Below, piece by piece: positions 3,188 to 36,700 of a DNA stretch of 64,000 nt. Numbering within the stretch: position 1 is the first letter of the stretch; each line of letters opens with the position of its first letter. The notes under the pieces are model-generated. The model was not told where the DNA came from and did not search any database. It worked only from the letters and a program-made list of their open reading frames with translations. The position numbers and the translations under genes are program-made. The stretch spans positions 62,001-126,000 of the IMG/VR virus record IMGVR_UViG_3300042289_000986; one strand, written 5' to 3'.

Positions 3188-3196
3188 TTTTGAAAG

Positions 3197-3653
3197 TGGA
3201 GGTGAGGAGAGTTGAACTCCTGTCCAAATAATCTAGGCTAAAAGGTCTACATGTTTGAGTGTCTTTAGCATTTCAGCCACCATACGGTAACGGAGACTTT
3301 AGGCTGCATAGTGACACTAACTGAGTTTATAGTCTGCCTGTAGACATTATCGCAATCTACATACGGTTGATATTTTGTTGTTACGTTAGAACTACCAACA
3401 ATCTAACAACCTCTGCTATCAATGATTCTTTAGAGGATCCAGAATCAAGGTTCTTAGGCGGCTAAGAGCATCTCTTCATCCGCATATGAGGCGAGAACCT
3501 CATCAGCGTTGTTGAAAATACTCTCGGCTTCTGCCAAGAGATCAGAAGTGAAATCTTCTGCATTTAGTTTTTTAATCGATTTTTTACGAGGCCATCGATT
3601 AACCTCGACATGCACTTTTAGTTTCAACTATCTGTCGAAACCAGTACACCCCC
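3197..3653 (-). ncRNA. ssrA: tmRNA (about 457 nt)
   Basis: 5' GGGGGTGTACTGGTTTCGAC; 3' GACAGGAGTTCAACTCTCCTCACCTCCA; acceptor stem with G3.U70; internal tag frame 3561-3454 ending LLAA-stop. Confidence 0.95.
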
Positions 3654-9064: not shown

Positions 9065-9097
9065 CAAAAGGAAAGATCTTTGATATGTTAGTAATAC

Positions 9098-9400
9098 GAT
9101 TTGGTGGCAGTTATAACCAAATCAGGATAAAAATTTTTGCTTGTTGGTGAGTTGGGGTTTTTATCTGAGCTAGGGGAGCCAAGCTGCGGTAAGCTATGAT
9201 CCTATGCATTTATACAATACAAGCTATGGACGAAGTTGTGTTCTGCGGATTGCGGAGCCTTCGTTGAGTAGTGGGACAAATTCTAGAATAAAACCCACTA
9301 AACACCAATTCGGGTTAATCTTGTAAGAGGAGCCGACTTTCCGTGGTTGTATAAACATGGCTGAGATTAGTCCTGAATCGTCGCGGGTAAACGATTCACA
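9098..9400 (+). ncRNA. Unassigned structured ncRNA (about 300 nt)
   Basis: Own promoter TTGACA(9061)-N17-TATGTT; GC-rich; no ORF; multiple nested helices. Confidence 0.7.
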
Positions 9401-9466
9401 TTTTCAGTAAATATTATTGTTATTTTTCTCGCGGAAACTTAGAGGTTTTTGCGAAAGGAGATAACA

Positions 9467-9571: not shown

Positions 9572-9596
9572 TGAATGATTCTGACTAACGTTTTTG

Positions 9597-9630
9597 AAAC
9601 AAGGGTAGAGAAATCTACCCTTGTTTTTTT
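9597..9630 (+). terminator. Intrinsic terminator
   Basis: AAACAAGGGTAGA-GAAA-TCTACCCTTGTTT then T-run. Confidence 0.85.
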
Positions 9631-9657: not shown

Positions 9658-9744
9658 GGTGCGATGGCTGAGTGGTCTAAAGCAGGAGTTTACTAAACTC
9701 TCGAAGTTTAATCGCTTCCGTGGGTTCGAATCCTACTCGCACCG
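9658..9744 (+). tRNA. tRNA-Ser(ACT)
   Basis: Acceptor GGTGCGA/TCGCACC, G73, long variable arm, loop TT-ACT-AA. Confidence 0.88.
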
Positions 9745-15828: not shown

Positions 15829-16203
15829 ATGGATTTATTATTTGTTTACGGTACTTTAATAGAAAATAAAAAAACAAAAATACATAAACTTTTAAACAAA
15901 AATAGTTTGTATATATCTAAAGCTGTTTTTCAAGGTAAACTTTATGATACAGGAAAATATCCAGCAGCAATAAAATCTAATAAAAAAAATGACATGGTTA
16001 TCGGAAATATAATAAAAATATTAGATTTAGAAATATTAAAAAAAATAGACGAATATGAAGGATTAGAGTATAAAAGAAATATAACGACATTAGTAGCTAA
16101 TAAAAAAAATATAAAAGCTTGGATTTATCTTTATTGTAAATCGATTGAGAAACATAAAAGAATAATATCGGGTAATTGGTTAAAATATAAAAAAATAGAT
16201 TGA
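15829..16203 (+). CDS. Gamma-glutamylcyclotransferase (AIG2-like) family protein
   Basis: LFVYGTL, GKLY..G.YP, DEYEG..YKR, AWIY. Confidence 0.85.
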   Translation: MDLLFVYGTLIENKKTKIHKLLNKNSLYISKAVFQGKLYDTGKYPAAIKSNKKNDMVIGNIIKILDLEILKKIDEYEGLEYKRNITTLVANKKNIKAWIYLYCKSIEKHKRIISGNWLKYKKID

Positions 16204-16246
16204 CTGATTAAATATATCTGGTAAATTAGATATAGTTCTTTGAAAA
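16200..16246 (+). promoter_or_regulatory. Sigma70-like promoter followed by boxA-like element
   Basis: TTGACT-N16-TAAATT then GTTCTTTGAAAA (16235-16246). Confidence 0.6.
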
Positions 16247-16257
16247 ATTTAAAAAAG

Positions 16258-16597
16258 TTTAATGTTGGCTAGTCGAACCAGCATTAAAAATCCTGATGCG
16301 AAACCCATCAGGTAACAAGGTATGCAACTCTACCTCTCTATACAACGGATACGTGTCCGTGTTCTGATCAGACATATAGAGTCCCATAGTGGATAACTTA
16401 AAAGTGAAAAAAAAGAGTGTAGGTTCTGGGTAAACCGAAGCTAGATTGGCTAAAACCCTTGTCCCGAAAGGGGTAAAGGTTCTGTGTTCTGATTCTAAGC
16501 ATTATGGCCCAATCGAACAACGATTGGCTTAGATAATGCCAGCAGATTAAGGCGCAACTTAATCGTCAGTCTGGTCCTGTTTGCGACAAAAACACCA
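16258..16597 (+). ncRNA. Unassigned structured ncRNA, 5' domain/RNA A (about 340 nt)
   Basis: GC-rich, no ORF, more than 8 helices with multibranch closure, ends ACCA + U-rich spacer. Confidence 0.7.
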
Positions 16598-16607
16598 ATT
16601 TTTATAA

Positions 16608-16789
16608 TCCGAGAATCCTAACGAGATTCTAGTCAGTACCCACTGATGAATAGAAGCTGTTCGTTACAGTAATAAGGGGGATGGTTGCCGTGACTCGCAT
16701 ACGGTGTGCGTAAGTTGACTCGTCTGAAAAGATAGGGAGTCCGTGCTTGATTCCGAAAGGAAAATGATGGTATGTAAAGACAGCCGAAA
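16608..16789 (+). ncRNA. Unassigned structured ncRNA, 3' domain/RNA B (about 180 nt)
   Basis: Hairpins AGAATC/GATTCT, TCAGT/ACTGA, GCTGT/ACAGT, GACTC/GAGTC; two GAAA tetraloops. Confidence 0.65.
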
Positions 16790-16814
16790 TTTTTTAATTC
16801 TTTTATAATTTAAT

Positions 16815-16888
16815 TCCTTGGTGGGCTAACGGTAAGCCAACAAACTGTTAATTTGTTCATCATGCTGGTTCGAATCCAGCCCAAGGAG
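16815..16888 (+). tRNA. tRNA-Asn(GTT)
   Basis: TCCTTGG/CCAAGGA; ACAAA-CT-GTT-AA-TTTGT. Confidence 0.92.
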
Positions 16889-16970
16889 CTTTTATTAAAT
16901 GTATAAAAATGGTGTTATACTAAGCCAAACCATTATATAAAATGTTACATATAATATGTAAGTATTATAT

Positions 16971-17525
16971 ATGAGTATAAATGCAGATCGTGTTAAAGCT
17001 TGGAGAAAAGATACTAAAAATTTAATTGTTGAAGGGTTTGGAGGAAAATGTTGTATATGTGGTTATGATAAATGTGAAGAAGCTTTTGATATACACCATA
17101 TAGATCCTACTCAAAAGACATTATCTTTTGGAGGAATAAGAGCTAATCCTAAACAATGGAAAATTTTATTAAAAGAGTTAGAAAATTGCGTTTTATTGTG
17201 TGCTAACTGTCACAGAGAATATCATGCAGGTAAAACTAACATCCCAAAAAATATTCCAAAATTTGTAGATTTAAAAGAAAAAAGAAAAATAAAAACATAT
17301 TGTCCAATTTGTAATAAGCAAAAAGCAAATTATCTTATAACTTGTTCAAAAACTTGTGCTGCAAAAAGAAAATCTCAAATCGAATGGGATAATTTTGATT
17401 TATATGATTTACACGTAATTCAAAAATTAAGTAATCTTAAAATAGGAAAAATAGTTGGTGCTTCTGATGTTGCAGTTATAAAAAGATTAAAAAAATTAAA
17501 AATTTATCAACTTCAAAATAATTAG
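16971..17525 (+). CDS. HNH endonuclease with Zn fingers and C-terminal HTH
   Basis: CCICG..FDIHHIDP..CVLLCANCHREYH; CPIC..CSKTC. Confidence 0.85.
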   Translation: MSINADRVKAWRKDTKNLIVEGFGGKCCICGYDKCEEAFDIHHIDPTQKTLSFGGIRANPKQWKILLKELENCVLLCANCHREYHAGKTNIPKNIPKFVDLKEKRKIKTYCPICNKQKANYLITCSKTCAAKRKSQIEWDNFDLYDLHVIQKLSNLKIGKIVGASDVAVIKRLKKLKIYQLQNN

Positions 17526-17540
17526 TGTATAATTACTATT

Positions 17541-18689: not shown

Positions 18690-19703
18690 ATGATTAAACA
18701 CGTTGATGTTATTGTCGGTCTTGCTTGGGGGGATGAAGGCAAGGGTAAAATTTCAAGTGCAATGGCCAAAGACTATGATATGGTCTGTCGTTGGAATGGT
18801 GGACCAAATGCTGGTCATACTGTTTATTTGGATGGGAAAAAATACAAAACCCATCTGATTCCTTCTGGTGTTTTTCATGGAAAGAAATCTGTTATCGGTC
18901 CAAACTGTGTTCTGAATATTGAGAAGTTTTTCAAAGAAATTGAATATCTAAAAGAAAATGGATTCGATACATCTTTGGTAAAAGTTCATCCAAATACTCA
19001 TGTGATTACGGATGCACACATTGAATATGATCTGAAACATTTGAAACCAAAACTTGGAACTACAGGTCAAGGTATTGCTCCTTGTTATGCAGACAAAGCA
19101 AATCGTGTTGGTATTCAGGTTAGTAAAGCAAACTTCAATCCCTTAAAAGATTTTATTTGGGATGGAAAATTAGAAGGAAAAATTCTTTGTGAAGGTGCTC
19201 AAAGTATTTGGTTGGATATCAACTACGGTGATTATCCTTATGTGACAAGCTCTGAAACATTTCCTCACAATGCTTGTTCGCTTGGATTTTCACCCAAGAA
19301 AATTCGTGATATTATTGGTGTCGCTAAAATCTATGATACCAAAAGTGGAGTTGATCCGTTGTTTCCAGAATGTCTTTGGAGTGATGTAAAACTAAACAAG
19401 TTAATTGAACTTGGTCAAGAATTTGGTTCTACTACAGGAAGAAAAAGACTTGTGAATTGGTTGAATTTTGGAAGATTAAACAATGCTATTAATCTTTCAG
19501 GTTCAACCAAAGTAATCATCAATAAGTGTGATGTTTTTGAAAAAGTTGGAATCTTCCGAATTAATAATTTTTACGAAACATCTTTGGAAACAAATTCTTT
19601 TGATCAGTTAAAAGACATCATTAAAAAGTCTTTGGTAAATCAAAACATCAATGGATTAAAACCAAATAATATTATTTTTTCTGGTGATCAGACGAATATT
19701 TAA
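18690..19703 (+). CDS. purA: Adenylosuccinate synthetase (short form)
   Basis: GLAWGDEGKGK, GGPNAGHT, GTTGQGI, EGAQ, YPYVTSS, EFGSTTGRKR. Confidence 0.95.
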   Translation: MIKHVDVIVGLAWGDEGKGKISSAMAKDYDMVCRWNGGPNAGHTVYLDGKKYKTHLIPSGVFHGKKSVIGPNCVLNIEKFFKEIEYLKENGFDTSLVKVHPNTHVITDAHIEYDLKHLKPKLGTTGQGIAPCYADKANRVGIQVSKANFNPLKDFIWDGKLEGKILCEGAQSIWLDINYGDYPYVTSSETFPHNACSLGFSPKKIRDIIGVAKIYDTKSGVDPLFPECLWSDVKLNKLIELGQEFGSTTGRKRLVNWLNFGRLNNAINLSGSTKVIINKCDVFEKVGIFRINNFYETSLETNSFDQLKDIIKKSLVNQNINGLKPNNIIFSGDQTNI

Positions 19704-21475: not shown

Positions 21476-21566
21476 GCTGGATTAGTGTAACTGGAAGCAC
21501 CGACAGTTTTATAAACTGTGTGCCCTAGATGAGGGCCGAGCGCGGGTTCAATTCCCGCATCCAGCA
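21476..21566 (+). tRNA. tRNA with TAT (Ile) anticodon and long variable arm
   Basis: GCTGGAT/ATCCAGC; ACAGT-TT-TAT-AA-ACTGT; V-arm GCCCT-AGATG-AGGGC; A73. Confidence 0.85.
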
Positions 21567-23736: not shown

Positions 23737-24423
23737 ATGAAAGGTTTATTTTACGGTTCTGTTCGCCAAGAAGCAAAAAACCACGAAATTTTATTCTGGG
23801 GTTGCTTGCACTGGCATCACAATCCAAAGTGGGATATCCCCATTTGGAAACGTAGAGGATTTGAGTCCGTACAAGAACACGACGAAGCTATTGTTTTAAA
23901 TTGGAATAGTAAAGCAACAGATAAAACAATTGGATTTATTCTTGGTGACACCATGTTTGGATATGGTGGTCAAGAAGAATTCACGAAACTCATGCGCCGT
24001 TTAAAGTTTCAGCGTTTGTTTATCATGTCTGGTAATCACACGGCAGGATGGAAACAATCATTTGAAAGTATCAAAGATAATACACTTTATATTGATGGAT
24101 ATCATAAAGAAGTAATATTTGTTCCAAATTATTTGGAAGCATATATTAACGGTCAGCCTATTGTCATGTGCCACTATCCAATTTTGTCTTGGAACGGAGC
24201 AGGAAAAGGTTCGTGGATGCTTTTTAGTCATGTTCATGGTTCACTTGTAAACAGTGAGCTTGGACGTATGTATTTGAAAGATGGAGGTTGTAACTTGGAA
24301 GTTTCCGTAGAAGCAACAAAATTTCCTTTGACTTATGGTGAAATTGGTGCTATTATGAAAACTAAATCTAAATTTAAAACAGATCATCATGACGAAAAGG
24401 CATCGACCCCATTTAGTTATTAA
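23737..24423 (+). CDS. Calcineurin-like phosphoesterase (first-motif Asp replaced by Cys)
   Basis: GCLHWHH, LGD, GNH, CHYP, SHVH. Confidence 0.75.
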   Translation: MKGLFYGSVRQEAKNHEILFWGCLHWHHNPKWDIPIWKRRGFESVQEHDEAIVLNWNSKATDKTIGFILGDTMFGYGGQEEFTKLMRRLKFQRLFIMSGNHTAGWKQSFESIKDNTLYIDGYHKEVIFVPNYLEAYINGQPIVMCHYPILSWNGAGKGSWMLFSHVHGSLVNSELGRMYLKDGGCNLEVSVEATKFPLTYGEIGAIMKTKSKFKTDHHDEKASTPFSY

Positions 24424-34720: not shown

Positions 34721-36700
34721 TTATTTGATTGGACATGCACCGCCTTCACATTCCAAACCTTGAATAGCATCTTCTCCCATATCAGAAGATTTCATTGTTT
34801 GAATTGGTTTAACTTTAGCTTTATTTTTTTCGTATGTTTCACCATTAATTTCTTCGTATGGTGCTTGTTTGAATCCGTGATTTTGTCTCAACAAAAAGCT
34901 TACAGATTTAATTGAATTTTGATAATTTTCTTCTAACCATTTTTTAAGCTCTGGAAGTTCTTCTTCCGAGTAATATGCGGTAACACTAACTGCATTATCT
35001 GACCAAATAGTTTGAAGTTTTTTAACTGTTTCCAGTTGTTTGATAACTCCCATATCTGCTGCAAAAATTGCACCATCTGGTGTTTCGCACGGAAACTCAA
35101 TAACAACGGTATCATGATTTTCTGAGCCATCAAAATTGATGACATATTCGGTATGATATCCCATATCTCTGCAATATTGAACTAATGGATCATTACTTGC
35201 CATACGAACACGACGAGTATAATATTTTGAATAAGCGGGGTGGATTCCTGGTGTAGCACCACCAAGAAGACTTAATGTTCCACTAGGCTTAATTGTTGTA
35301 AGTTTAATACTACGAGGCCATCCTTTTTGTTTACTCCACTCTTTATCAAATTTTCTCAATTCTTTATAACAATCGTCAAGCCAATCGACTTTATCTAATG
35401 CTTGACAAACACCAGTTACTCCCAAACCAAGACGCATGTTCTTGTGAACAATTTTATTTGTTTCATCGTGAATGAATGGAAGTGCAGCGATTGCTTTTTG
35501 TGTTTTATAAAGCAATCTGGCACAATCAACCAATTCTTCTTTGTTTGAAATATTATTCAAATAAAGTTCTGAGAGATTGCAACACTCATAAGAGGCAAGA
35601 CTAATTTCACCACATGGGTTTGTACCAACTACATTGTCTTCATCGGTTGGATAAAGACTAGAATCCTTCATTGGACCATCTTTAATTCTTCCATATTTTT
35701 GAGAAAGAGGAAGGTTAAAGAAACCATAAGGTTCGCCTTTTGCAAAACCAGTTTCTTTATCTGTTGTATAACCATTTTGCCAGATCTCGTTTGAGATGTG
35801 GGAAAAGTCATCAGCATAAATCGTGTTGTTAGACATTGCTCTCCAGTTAGGAATATTTCCCAATGACCAATTTTTGGCGCGTAAAAAGAGATAATCATCA
35901 GGATCTCCTATAGCAATTTGGGCAGAGCGACGAACATTACCAGAAACAACAATACTTCCAATAATATTACAAATATCTAATACATCGATAGAACGAAGCT
36001 TTTTGCCTTCTCTTGTTTGAAAGATTTTTGCAATTTTGTCAATACCTTCGATTAATATTCCTGCTCCGCTTGCTTGTCCACCGAAACCTTGAATCTTTTC
36101 ACCTGCACCACGAATAAGGATTGTAGAATAATTAAAAGATTTTCCTGTTACATAAAATGCATGAAGAACTCGATCTAAAAGTTCGATCCAGCCTTCACGA
36201 CTATCTGGAATAATAAACTTTGCATCTTTTGTACATTCATGTGTAATCGTTACACCTTTTTTAATTTTAGGAAGTTCGTGAATATCTTCTCTACGAATAG
36301 AAAATCCGACACCACCACCAAGCATTAAATTTTCAAATAAAAACAAAAATGCTTTTGGTTCATTCATAGACACATTCCAACAATTCAATAAAGAATTTGC
36401 TCCAAAACGCTCAACTGTGTTTGTTCCTAATTGCCAAAGCATTCTTCCTGCATAGTTGCAACGCAAGTTGAAAATATGATCAAACAGTCTTTCGGCTTCT
36501 TCTTGTGTATAATCTGCACCTAGTTTTTGTGCTCCGTTGATACAACGTTGAATTGTTTCATGCCACTCTTCTTTTTGTCCATCGTCTTTTAAACGAGCAT
36601 ATGTTCTTTTATAAACAATATAACCAAGTCCATTGAAACCCCAATTAGTTTTTTTGTTAGAATATTTTTTAACAAACGAATCCGAAATAATTTTTTCCAT
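34721..36700 (-). CDS. nrdJ: Class II (adenosylcobalamin) ribonucleotide reductase
   Basis: KRTYAR, NC, GGGVG, NVRRSA, TNPCGE, TIKPSGT, C-terminal CEGGACP. Confidence 0.93.
   Translation of the reverse strand: MEKIISDSFVKKYSNKKTNWGFNGLGYIVYKRTYARLKDDGQKEEWHETIQRCINGAQKLGADYTQEEAERLFDHIFNLRCNYAGRMLWQLGTNTVERFGANSLLNCWNVSMNEPKAFLFLFENLMLGGGVGFSIRREDIHELPKIKKGVTITHECTKDAKFIIPDSREGWIELLDRVLHAFYVTGKSFNYSTILIRGAGEKIQGFGGQASGAGILIEGIDKIAKIFQTREGKKLRSIDVLDICNIIGSIVVSGNVRRSAQIAIGDPDDYLFLRAKNWSLGNIPNWRAMSNNTIYADDFSHISNEIWQNGYTTDKETGFAKGEPYGFFNLPLSQKYGRIKDGPMKDSSLYPTDEDNVVGTNPCGEISLASYECCNLSELYLNNISNKEELVDCARLLYKTQKAIAALPFIHDETNKIVHKNMRLGLGVTGVCQALDKVDWLDDCYKELRKFDKEWSKQKGWPRSIKLTTIKPSGTLSLLGGATPGIHPAYSKYYTRRVRMASNDPLVQYCRDMGYHTEYVINFDGSENHDTVVIEFPCETPDGAIFAADMGVIKQLETVKKLQTIWSDNAVSVTAYYSEEELPELKKWLEENYQNSIKSVSFLLRQNHGFKQAPYEEINGETYEKNKAKVKPIQTMKSSDMGEDAIQGLECEGGACPIK

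What the first reader, a model, noticed from the sequence alone, without database searches (positions are those of the whole stretch)
16608..16789. Compact 180-nt module with possible pseudoknot and two GAAA tetraloops (ribozyme-like)
Seen: three short hairpins (AGAATC/GATTCT; TCAGT-ACCC-ACTGA; GCTGT/ACAGT); a GGGGG run able to pair with the ACCC loop; then a junction closed by GGTTG/CAGCC containing CGCAT/GTGCG, GACTC-GTCT-GAAA-AGAT-AGG-GAGTC and TTCC-GAAA-GGAA. Inference: tertiary-folded RNA, possibly independent of the upstream domain.
Basis: partly seen in the sequence, partly recalled or inferred. Interest (0 to 1): 0.62.

Follow-up and report, generated by a model that had tools for sequence, protein, structure and literature searches.

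The report
Pseudoknotted RNA domain before phage tRNAs
The flagged 181 bases are a real, tightly knotted RNA domain that freshwater jumbo phages place at the end of large non-coding RNAs, just before a tRNA gene; it matches no described RNA family and there is no sign that it is a ribozyme.

Summary
The hairpins, both GAAA loops and the G-run/ACCC pseudoknot are really at 16609-16789. The proposed closing helix GGTTG/CAGCC is not supported.

The stretch is the 3' domain ("M") of a roughly 560-nt, ORF-free, GC-rich transcription unit. It runs: promoter-like site 16200-16227, core RNA 16233-16603, M, then tRNA-Asn 16815-16889. The host genome is a 211.6-kb lake phage.

A covariance model of M finds it in close relatives. 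It also finds M in unrelated 130-180-kb phages (terminase about 24% identical). There M sits tens of kb from their copy of the core, ends a different structured RNA, and precedes tRNA-Cys.

Three lineages, 65-72% identical, keep 54-56 modelled pairs 98-100% canonical.

RNA-library contigs from four lake studies lie only on this RNA. Rfam 15 gives no match.

Best reading: M is a reusable, self-folding 3'-terminal domain of tRNA-linked phage RNAs, resembling ROOL and GOLLD in setting only. Its function is unknown and catalysis is untested.

The parts
16200..16227 (+). Sigma-70-like promoter: TTGACT, 16-nt spacer, TAAATT, with TG before the -10.
   Evidence: A site of the same kind lies at the same distance upstream of the RNA in the W-lineage loci and the core-A-only loci of the other lineage printed (not seen in L121). 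Inferred, not shown to fire.
16233..16603 (+). It is closed by a terminal helix of the 5' A/U run with 16597-16603, and contains covarying hairpins.
   Evidence: GC is 42% against a background of about 25%, and there is no ORF. Homologues occur in unrelated phages, with variable hairpins that refold in every variant. The terminal helix AAAAU/AUUUU becomes AAAAC/GUUUU in L129, read from the sequences. Rfam gives nothing.
16604..16608 (+). A/U linker between core and module. This is the site of a ~125-nt extra hairpin domain in L003/L006.
   Evidence: The inserted domain has a homologue inside the upstream RNA of L172.
16609..16789 (+). Module M, the finding: 181 nt, 8 helices plus 3 long-range pairings.
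   Evidence: CM R1 gives hits.
16612..16630 (+). Hairpin Ha: 16612-17 / 16625-30, with 7-nt loop 16618-24.
   Evidence: The stem is fully replaced in L172/L173 and L174, while the loop keeps UAA.
16632..16647 (+). Hairpin Hb: 16632-36 / 16643-47, with 6-nt loop 16637-42 holding CCC.
16656..16670 (+). Hairpin Hc: 16656-59 / 16667-70. The fifth pair, 16660/16666, is kept in some variants only.
   Evidence: Compensatory changes occur within the window's lineage and in L174.
16619..16666 (+). Kissing loop: Ha loop 16619-24 pairs with Hc loop 16661-66 (6 bp).
   Evidence: Found. It has 5-6 pairs in all 10 sequences. In L174 two positions change on both sides, C-G to U-A and G-C to C-G.
16639..16678 (+). 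Pseudoknot PK1: CCC 16639-41 pairs with GGG 16676-78.
   Evidence: C-G becomes U-A in L172, L173 and L174. L174 has 5 pairs.
16683..16695 (+). Hairpin Hx: 16683-86 / 16692-95, with loop 16687-91.
   Evidence: Pair 1 is G-U, G-C or A-U. Pair 4 is U-G or C-G.
16696..16710 (+). Hairpin He: 16696-700 / 16706-10, with loop NCGGN at 16701-05.
   Evidence: Pairs 4 and 5 vary and stay paired.
16702..16786 (+). Pseudoknot PK2: He loop 16702-05 pairs with GCCG 16783-86 of the conserved 3' tail.
   Evidence: Four pairs in all 10 sequences. Three are invariant and the fourth is U-G or C-G. This is the weakest of the three long-range pairings.
16717..16741 (+). Hairpin Hf with GNRA loop (GAAA at 16726-29) and an AGG bulge at 16734-36.
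   Evidence: A 9-10 bp stem of unrelated sequence is capped by GCAA in L172, L173 and L174.
16742..16774 (+). Helix Hh (16742-47 / 16769-74) enclosing hairpin Hg (16751-54 / 16759-62, GAAA at 16755-58).
   Evidence: Hh is rebuilt in L003/L138 and in L172/L173 and L174. The Hg loop is GAAA, GCAA or GUAA in most, and GGAUA in L003/L138.
16815..16889 (+). tRNA-Asn(GTT), 25 nt after M.
   Evidence: Every M copy is followed by a tRNA: Asn in the window's lineage and Cys in the other.

Best explanation
The stretch is a self-contained, pseudoknotted RNA domain (M). It forms the 3' end of a roughly 560-nt phage non-coding RNA.

Shown:
- The fold is conserved in three lineages.
- M occurs behind two different large RNAs, and always just 5' of a tRNA gene.
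- The RNA is present in RNA libraries from lakes.

Inferred: host RNA polymerase starts at the promoter-like site 16200-16227 and reads core, M and tRNA-Asn as one precursor. RNase P, cutting at the tRNA's 5' end, then makes the 3' end of the core-M RNA. M folds on its own into a rigid body in which three hairpins are tied together by a kissing loop and a pseudoknot, followed by four further helices. The last conserved bases are paired back into a hairpin loop (PK2), which would hide the new 3' end from exonucleases. The two always-GNRA tetraloops point outward to dock on the core, on another copy, or on another RNA.

On this reading M is a reusable stabilising and docking cap for tRNA-linked phage RNAs of the ROOL/GOLLD kind. 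What the whole RNA does remains unknown.
For: Fold: 54-56 modelled pairs are 98-100% canonical in the window, L172, L173 and L174, at 65-72% sequence identity. The same pairs score 25-45% when slid and 36-38% in shuffles. Compensatory changes occur in Ha, Hc, Hf, Hh, Hx, the kissing loop and PK1.

Reuse: R1 hits G033 at 24132-24316. That genome's core A lies at 77253-77404 on the other strand. R1 also hits G032, G034 and G037. The terminase of that lineage is about 24% identical to the window's in G031, G033, G034 and G035; it did not reach the threshold in G032 and G037.

Context: the upstream RNA there is different and structured, and tRNA-Cys follows 5 nt downstream. In the window's lineage a tRNA-Asn always follows, although its sequence differs between variants.

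Transcription unit: there is a promoter-like site and no + strand terminator-like site between 15800 and 17100.

Expression: contigs of four independent lake RNA libraries cover 16277-16596 and 16625-16784. Apart from two short, mismatched pieces (31-34 nt), nothing lands on 2.4 kb of flanking genes.

Kind: ROOL and GOLLD are large phage RNAs near tRNA islands (10.1101/2024.12.08.627333).
Against: - There is no direct evidence that core and M are one molecule. Every RNA-library contig stops between 16585 and 16625, at the core-M joint. This may reflect strain branching in assembly, or real processing.
- A promoter-like TTGCGA-16-TATAAT spans 16581-16608, though its -10 is not kept in L004 or L113.
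- Core A manages without M in other phages.
- No receptor for the GNRA loops was found.
- PK2 is nearly invariant, so it is untested by covariation.
- RNase P cleavage and 3'-end protection are inference only.
- Within the window's own lineage the flanking genes are as conserved as M, at 88-97%. Variable columns are no rarer in stems than in loops.
Confidence: 0.45

Rival explanations
1. M is a cis-acting leader of the downstream pre-tRNA. As a folded body 3-25 nt upstream of the tRNA's first base, it would set the rate or order of RNase P processing, or shield the precursor, for particular phage tRNAs (Asn, Cys).
For: In all sequences M lies directly 5' of a tRNA, whichever RNA lies upstream. 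The tRNA-Asn gene has been exchanged for unrelated alleles while M stayed in place.
Against: The other 13 tRNAs of the window have no such leader. The Ha loop reads UAAC or UAAU whether Asn or Cys follows, so there is no codon-like match to the tRNA. The spacer length varies from 3 to 25 nt.
Confidence: 0.2
2. M is a separate trans-acting small RNA, released on both sides from a poly-RNA precursor, with its own protein, ribosome or RNA partner.
For: M combines with two different upstream RNAs. RNA-library contigs break at the core-M joint, and one run has a contig of M alone at 16625-16784. Extra domains can be inserted at the joint in L003 and L174.
Against: No processing site or promoter is conserved at the joint. 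Contigs cannot show RNA ends. M was never found without an upstream structured RNA.
Confidence: 0.2
3. M is a new self-cleaving or otherwise catalytic RNA, for example one that frees the tRNA or the core.
For: It has a compact, multiply pseudoknotted fold with invariant joining bases, and sits at a processing junction.
Against: There is no match to any ribozyme model of Rfam 15 at E<=10. The only ribozyme-like word, CUGAUGA at 16643-49, lies in the Hb stem and is missing in L174. Core A with tRNA-Met needs no such element. No cleavage data exist.
Confidence: 0.06
4. The hairpins are chance products of GC-rich spacer DNA and have no function.
For: The MFE z-score of the module alone is -0.81. 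Within the window's lineage its conservation equals that of the flanks.
Against: The fold is conserved with many compensatory changes in phages whose terminases are about 24% identical. The RNA is present in four RNA libraries.
Confidence: 0.02

Closest known systems
ROOL RNA (Rfam RF03087)
   Same: A phage-encoded, large, ornate non-coding RNA of similar total length (about 560 vs 574 nt) with several pseudoknots. It lies next to tRNA genes, is abundant as RNA, and has no known function.
   Different: The ROOL model finds nothing in the whole 211-kb genome at E<=1 or in the region at E<=10. The RNA here is modular: a core that can stand alone plus a reusable 3' domain. Multimer formation is untested.
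GOLLD RNA
   Same: It was found in lake metagenomes and phages, near or even containing tRNAs. It is built of two regions, one conserved and one variable, joined by a linker.
   Different: No Rfam family reaches E<=10 on the module or E<=1 on its relatives. According to the paper read, the GOLLD profile is held in Rfam. The order also differs: here the tRNA follows the last domain.
T4 stable RNAs C and D in the tRNA gene cluster (from my own knowledge, not checked here)
   Same: Small stable phage RNAs of unknown function, co-transcribed with tRNAs and cut out by tRNA-processing enzymes. The window's phage has a T4-type terminase.
   Different: Those RNAs are about 120-140 nt and are not known to carry this fold.
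MALAT1 / MEN-beta 3' ends: RNase P cut before a tRNA-like element, with the end protected by a folded 3' element (from my own knowledge)
   Same: The proposed logic is the same. A long non-coding RNA gets its 3' end from RNase P cleavage upstream of a tRNA(-like) structure, and a terminal fold hides that end.
   Different: That system is eukaryotic and uses a triple helix. Here there is a true tRNA and a 4-bp loop-tail pseudoknot. The parallel is inference only.

Membership tests
ROOL (RF03087) | Match to the family covariance model (gathering score 99.1 bits). | tested here: not met
   No match at E<=1 in the whole genome (the 14 control genomes do not ring either, so there is no positive control). 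No match at E<=10 in the cmscan of the region.
ROOL / GOLLD kind | Encoded in phages or prophages, beside tRNA genes. | tested here: met
   The genome is a jumbo phage with terminal repeats. A tRNA follows every copy.
ROOL / GOLLD kind | RNA-only homo-oligomer (nanocage). | not testable with these tools
   Needs cryo-EM or SEC-MALS of transcripts.
GOLLD | Match to the Rfam model of the conserved 3' region. | tested here: not met
   All 4227 Rfam 15 families were scanned, and nothing but tRNA and tmRNA matched. I did not confirm the GOLLD accession; my guess, RF01998, turned out to be a group II intron piece.
Small self-cleaving ribozymes (hammerhead, twister, pistol, hatchet, HDV-like and others in Rfam) | Match to a family model and its conserved catalytic core. 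| tested here: not met
   Zero matches at E<=10 on 16600-16800. CUGAUGA at 16643-49 is paired in Hb and is not conserved in L174.
Small self-cleaving ribozymes | Site-specific self-cleavage. | not testable with these tools
   Needs transcription and cleavage assays.
Group I intron | Match to RF00028; interrupts a gene. | tested here: not met
   No match here. The same tool found a group I intron in L126 at 83 bits, which serves as a positive control. No split gene flanks the RNA.
T-box leader | A specifier codon matching the sensed tRNA, a UGGN bulge matching its discriminator base, and a terminator/antiterminator switch. | tested here: not met
   No Rfam match. The Ha loop is UAAC or UAAU before both Asn and Cys tRNAs. 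UGGU is invariant although the discriminator is G (Asn) or U (Cys). No + strand terminator was found.
Bacterial RNase P RNA | Match to the Rfam models and the universal P4 core sequences. | tested here: not met
   No match in core or module.

The most novel reading that the evidence does not exclude
M and the cores it caps belong to an undescribed class of modular, tRNA-tethered phage RNAs. M would be either the piece that lets them assemble into RNA-only higher-order particles, using its two outward GNRA loops and loop-loop contacts between copies, or a new catalytic fold that matures the adjoining tRNA or RNA without RNase P.
Probability: 0.12. Interest if true: 0.9.

Novelty: new variant of a known kind. 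Interest (0 to 1): 0.68.

Why it matters
Large, ornate phage RNAs beside tRNA genes (ROOL, GOLLD) are abundant and structurally spectacular, yet their function is unknown, and only a few such classes are known.

Here is a further, unrelated set, found in uncultured freshwater jumbo phages and present in lake metatranscriptomes. It has an unusual property: it is built from exchangeable domains. One 180-nt domain keeps an intricate knotted fold while being attached to different cores and different tRNAs in phages that share almost nothing else.

That gives a compact, well-defined target for structure determination. The model has 8 helices and 3 tertiary pairings, two of which are supported by covariation. 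It also gives a natural experiment, the same core with and without M, for asking what such RNAs do and why they are tied to tRNA genes.

Tried and rejected
**Searches that gave nothing**
- blastn of the window RNA, and of the L130 core, against deposited phage genomes: no match.
- blastn of the RNA against 30 records of terminase relatives: only two chance 20-mers, and L088 is coding DNA without a tRNA.
- R1 and R2 in those 30 records: nothing for R1, and only 14-19-bit noise for R2. Two complete relatives (G006, G019) therefore lack both RNAs.
- The core motif in 596 Gb of prokaryote genomes: 17 of 18 hits are chance. One 3-kb contig, binned as Melainabacteria (L146), carries a divergent core without M.
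- The last IMG/VR pattern added only L179, a chance hit in GC-rich coding DNA.

**Helices I modelled first and then dropped**
- I first modelled 16686-91 / 16767-72, 16712-15 / 16745-48 and 16683-85 / 16783-85.
- I dropped them once the divergent copies showed Hx, Hh and PK2 instead.

**Other pairings considered**
- The Hb loop is also complementary to the core at 16427-32. I estimate this is within chance for a 6-mer against 370 nt, and PK1 has the covariation.
- Several other core-module 6-mers are not kept in relatives.

**Family ideas rejected**
- Hammerhead-like CUGAUGA, T-box-like UGGU with a codon loop, RNase P and group I intron: all rejected (see the membership tests).
- Core 'B' upstream of M in the other phages is not detectably related to core A by R2 with filters off. 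Both do start with AGUUCUUU and end with CA(A/C)CA-U-run, so a distant relationship is unresolved.
- A second ORF-free island at 9085-9420 is not related by R2.

**Other**
- Literature searches found no description of this RNA.
I redid it with coordinates only.

Full report
**Setting**

The window is bases 62001-126000 of a 211,587-bp virus record with direct terminal repeats. It is about 25% G+C, carries 14 tRNA genes and a tmRNA, and encodes a T4-type large terminase and a tail sheath. Sequencing runs that hold the locus are lake and freshwater samples.

The finding (16608-16789) is the last third of a 611-nt gap without ORFs, 16204-16814. That gap stands out at 42% G+C. It lies between a GGACT-family ORF and tRNA-Asn(GTT) at 16815-16889, and an HNH endonuclease ORF follows. 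A sigma-70-like site with an extended -10 sits at 16200-16227. No + strand terminator-like site lies anywhere between 15800 and 17100.

**The observation**

Folding energy alone is unremarkable for the module (z = -0.81). It is better for the whole 551 nt (z = -2.9). The case therefore rests on comparison.

**Close relatives**

Pattern scans of IMG/VR and JGI metagenomes, plus a covariance model of the module (R1), found seven distinct variants at 90% identity or more. In each, the module lies directly behind the same upstream RNA and is followed by a tRNA-Asn.

These variants gave only modest support: 96% of cells paired and two doubly changed pairs. Their flanking genes are just as conserved, at 88-97%. 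Variable columns are no rarer in stems than in loops.

L003/L006 carry an extra ~125-nt hairpin domain exactly at the joint between the upstream RNA and the module.

**The upstream RNA is a family of its own**

Its invariant 16-mer retrieved further jumbo-phage contigs of 86-178 kb. In these the RNA ends at its terminal helix. It is followed within 3 nt by tRNA-Met (L122, L126, L129, L130) or by an ORF (L125, L121), with no module. L146, a 3-kb contig from the prokaryote genome collection, carries a divergent core followed by an ORF.

The variable hairpins differ in sequence but refold in every variant. Modelled pairs covary. These phages are unrelated to the window's phage: terminase identity is about 24% over a partial match.

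Within the window's own terminase clade, only three of the searched records have the RNA, and two complete genomes lack it. The distribution is therefore patchy.

**The turn**

I ran R1 over the whole records of those unrelated phages. It hit once each in G032, G033, G034 and G037, at 38-80 bits with E from 1e-9 to 1e-22. These hits lie far from the genomes' own core-A copies. In G033, for example, the hit is at 24 kb on the + strand and the core is at 77 kb on the - strand.

There the module is again the last ~180 nt of a structured, G+C-rich stretch. This stretch is a different upstream RNA, which I call core B, and it has its own covarying hairpins. tRNA-Cys(GCA) follows the module after 5 nt.

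R2 with filters off sees no relation between core B and core A, although their first and last few bases are alike. One core-B copy (L172) contains a domain homologous to the L003 insertion, and L174 has yet another insertion at the joint.

The pieces therefore behave as exchangeable domains, laid out as: [core A or B] - A/U linker (with or without an insert) - [M] - tRNA.

**Structure of M**

With three lineages at 65-72% identity, the fold could be fixed by coordinates.

- **Helices:** Ha, Hb, Hc, Hx, He, Hf, Hh and Hg (see the parts list).
  - Hf and Hh are rebuilt with unrelated sequence.
  - Pair 1 of Hx is G-U, G-C or A-U.
- **Tetraloops:** the Hf loop is GNRA in all ten sequences (GAAA or GCAA). 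The Hg loop is GAAA, GCAA or GUAA in most, with a 5-nt GGAUA loop in L003/L138.
- **Long-range pairings:**
  - (i) A 6-bp kissing loop joins the Ha and Hc loops. In L174 two of its positions change on both sides.
  - (iii) The He loop pairs with GCCG of the conserved 3' tail. Three of these pairs are invariant and the fourth is U-G or C-G.

Of 54-56 modelled pairs, 98-100% are canonical in each lineage. The figure is 25-45% when the partners are slid, and at most 59% in 1000 shuffles.

My own first closing helices were also wrong (see tried and rejected).

**Expression**

Contigs from four independent freshwater RNA libraries were laid on 3 kb around the locus. They cover only 16277-16596 and 16625-16784. 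Two are identical to the window. On the flanking ORFs there are only two short, mismatched pieces, at 17269-17302 and 17476-17506.

This argues for an abundant RNA rather than carried-over DNA. Contigs cannot show ends or strands, however, and all of them break at the core-M joint, which is also where variants diverge.

**Known families**

Rfam 15 (4227 models) gives only tRNA and tmRNA in the window. It gives nothing at E<=10 on the region, on the module alone or on the core alone. It gives nothing on relatives of either RNA. The tool does work: it found a group I intron and tmRNAs in neighbouring loci.

The ROOL model finds nothing in the whole genome. No deposited phage genome holds either RNA. 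I found no paper describing them.

ROOL and GOLLD are the nearest in kind: large phage RNAs near tRNA islands that form RNA-only cages. Membership fails for both.

**What it most likely is**

M is a self-folding, reusable 3'-terminal domain of tRNA-linked phage non-coding RNAs.

- **Shown:** the conserved fold, its reuse with two cores and two tRNAs, and its presence in RNA libraries.
- **Inferred:** one precursor runs from the promoter-like site through the tRNA. RNase P makes the 3' end. PK2 hides that end. The GNRA loops dock on the core or on other molecules.

The rivals are a pre-tRNA leader element, a separately released small RNA, and a ribozyme. None is excluded. The ribozyme idea has nothing in its favour beyond the compact fold.

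**Limits**

No R-scape-style statistics were possible. The covariation counts come from my own coordinate tables on ten sequences.

Noticed in passing
window 16233-16603 (also L121, L122, L125, L126, L129, L130, L146): The upstream 'core A' RNA is itself an undescribed family of 320-430 nt shared by unrelated jumbo phages. It has an invariant 16-mer at 16319-34, three copies of GUUCU, a conserved RCGCAA hairpin loop, and, in most variants, an H-type pseudoknot near the 5' end that the window's copy lacks.
   Followed up: partly
L172:1083-1532, L173:1250-1488, L174:1734-2100 (- strand): 'Core B', the structured RNA upstream of M in the other phage lineage, has covarying hairpins and GAAA loops and no Rfam match. 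It may extend further upstream, towards tRNA-Lys in L173.
   Followed up: partly
L003:10712-10834 (- strand); L172 about 1240-1370: A ~125-nt GAGACG...CGUCUC hairpin domain is inserted at the core-M joint in L003/L006. A homologue lies inside core B of an unrelated phage, so this is a second mobile RNA domain. It contains a 9-nt complement of M's 3' tail.
   Followed up: partly
window 16581-16608: A promoter-like TTGCGA-16-TATAAT (10 of 12 matches) spans the core-M joint. Its -10 is not kept in L004 or L113.
   Followed up: partly
window 16797-17530: The tRNA-Asn allele plus the HNH endonuclease ORF (16971-17525) are shared only with L003. L004, L113 and L137 have an unrelated tRNA-Asn sequence and no HNH gene at the same place. 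L138 has an 88-nt tRNA-Asn. This looks like endonuclease-linked cassette exchange.
   Followed up: partly
window 9085-9420: A second ORF-free, GC-richer stretch lies behind a TTGACA-type promoter-like site. It is followed by a small hydrophobic ORF (from about 9468), a terminator-like hairpin (about 9592-9630) and tRNA-Ser. It shares two short words with core A, but there is no CM similarity and the fold z-score is -1.6.
   Followed up: partly
window 3194-3653 (- strand): A phage-encoded tmRNA (138 bits) with predicted tag ADEEMLLAA.
   Followed up: no
L126:2158-2803: In another jumbo phage a tmRNA match (2158-2580) abuts a group I intron match (2569-2803, 83 bits). This may be an intron at the tmRNA 3' end.
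   Followed up: no
window 9658-9744, 21476-21566: Unusual phage tRNAs: tRNA-Ser with anticodon ACT, and a 91-nt tRNA-Ile(TAT).
   Followed up: no
window 16315-16462 and 16575-16608 (RNA runs X19, X24): RNA-library contigs show more divergent relatives. One keeps 16315-36 and 16407-62 but replaces the 70 nt between them. Another keeps the core's end but continues with 191 unrelated letters where M would start.
   Followed up: no
window 15829-16203, 18690-19703, 34721-36700: Auxiliary metabolic genes: a gamma-glutamyl cyclotransferase-like ORF (absent at this spot in L004, L113 and L137), an adenylosuccinate synthetase, and a B12-dependent ribonucleotide reductase.
   Followed up: no
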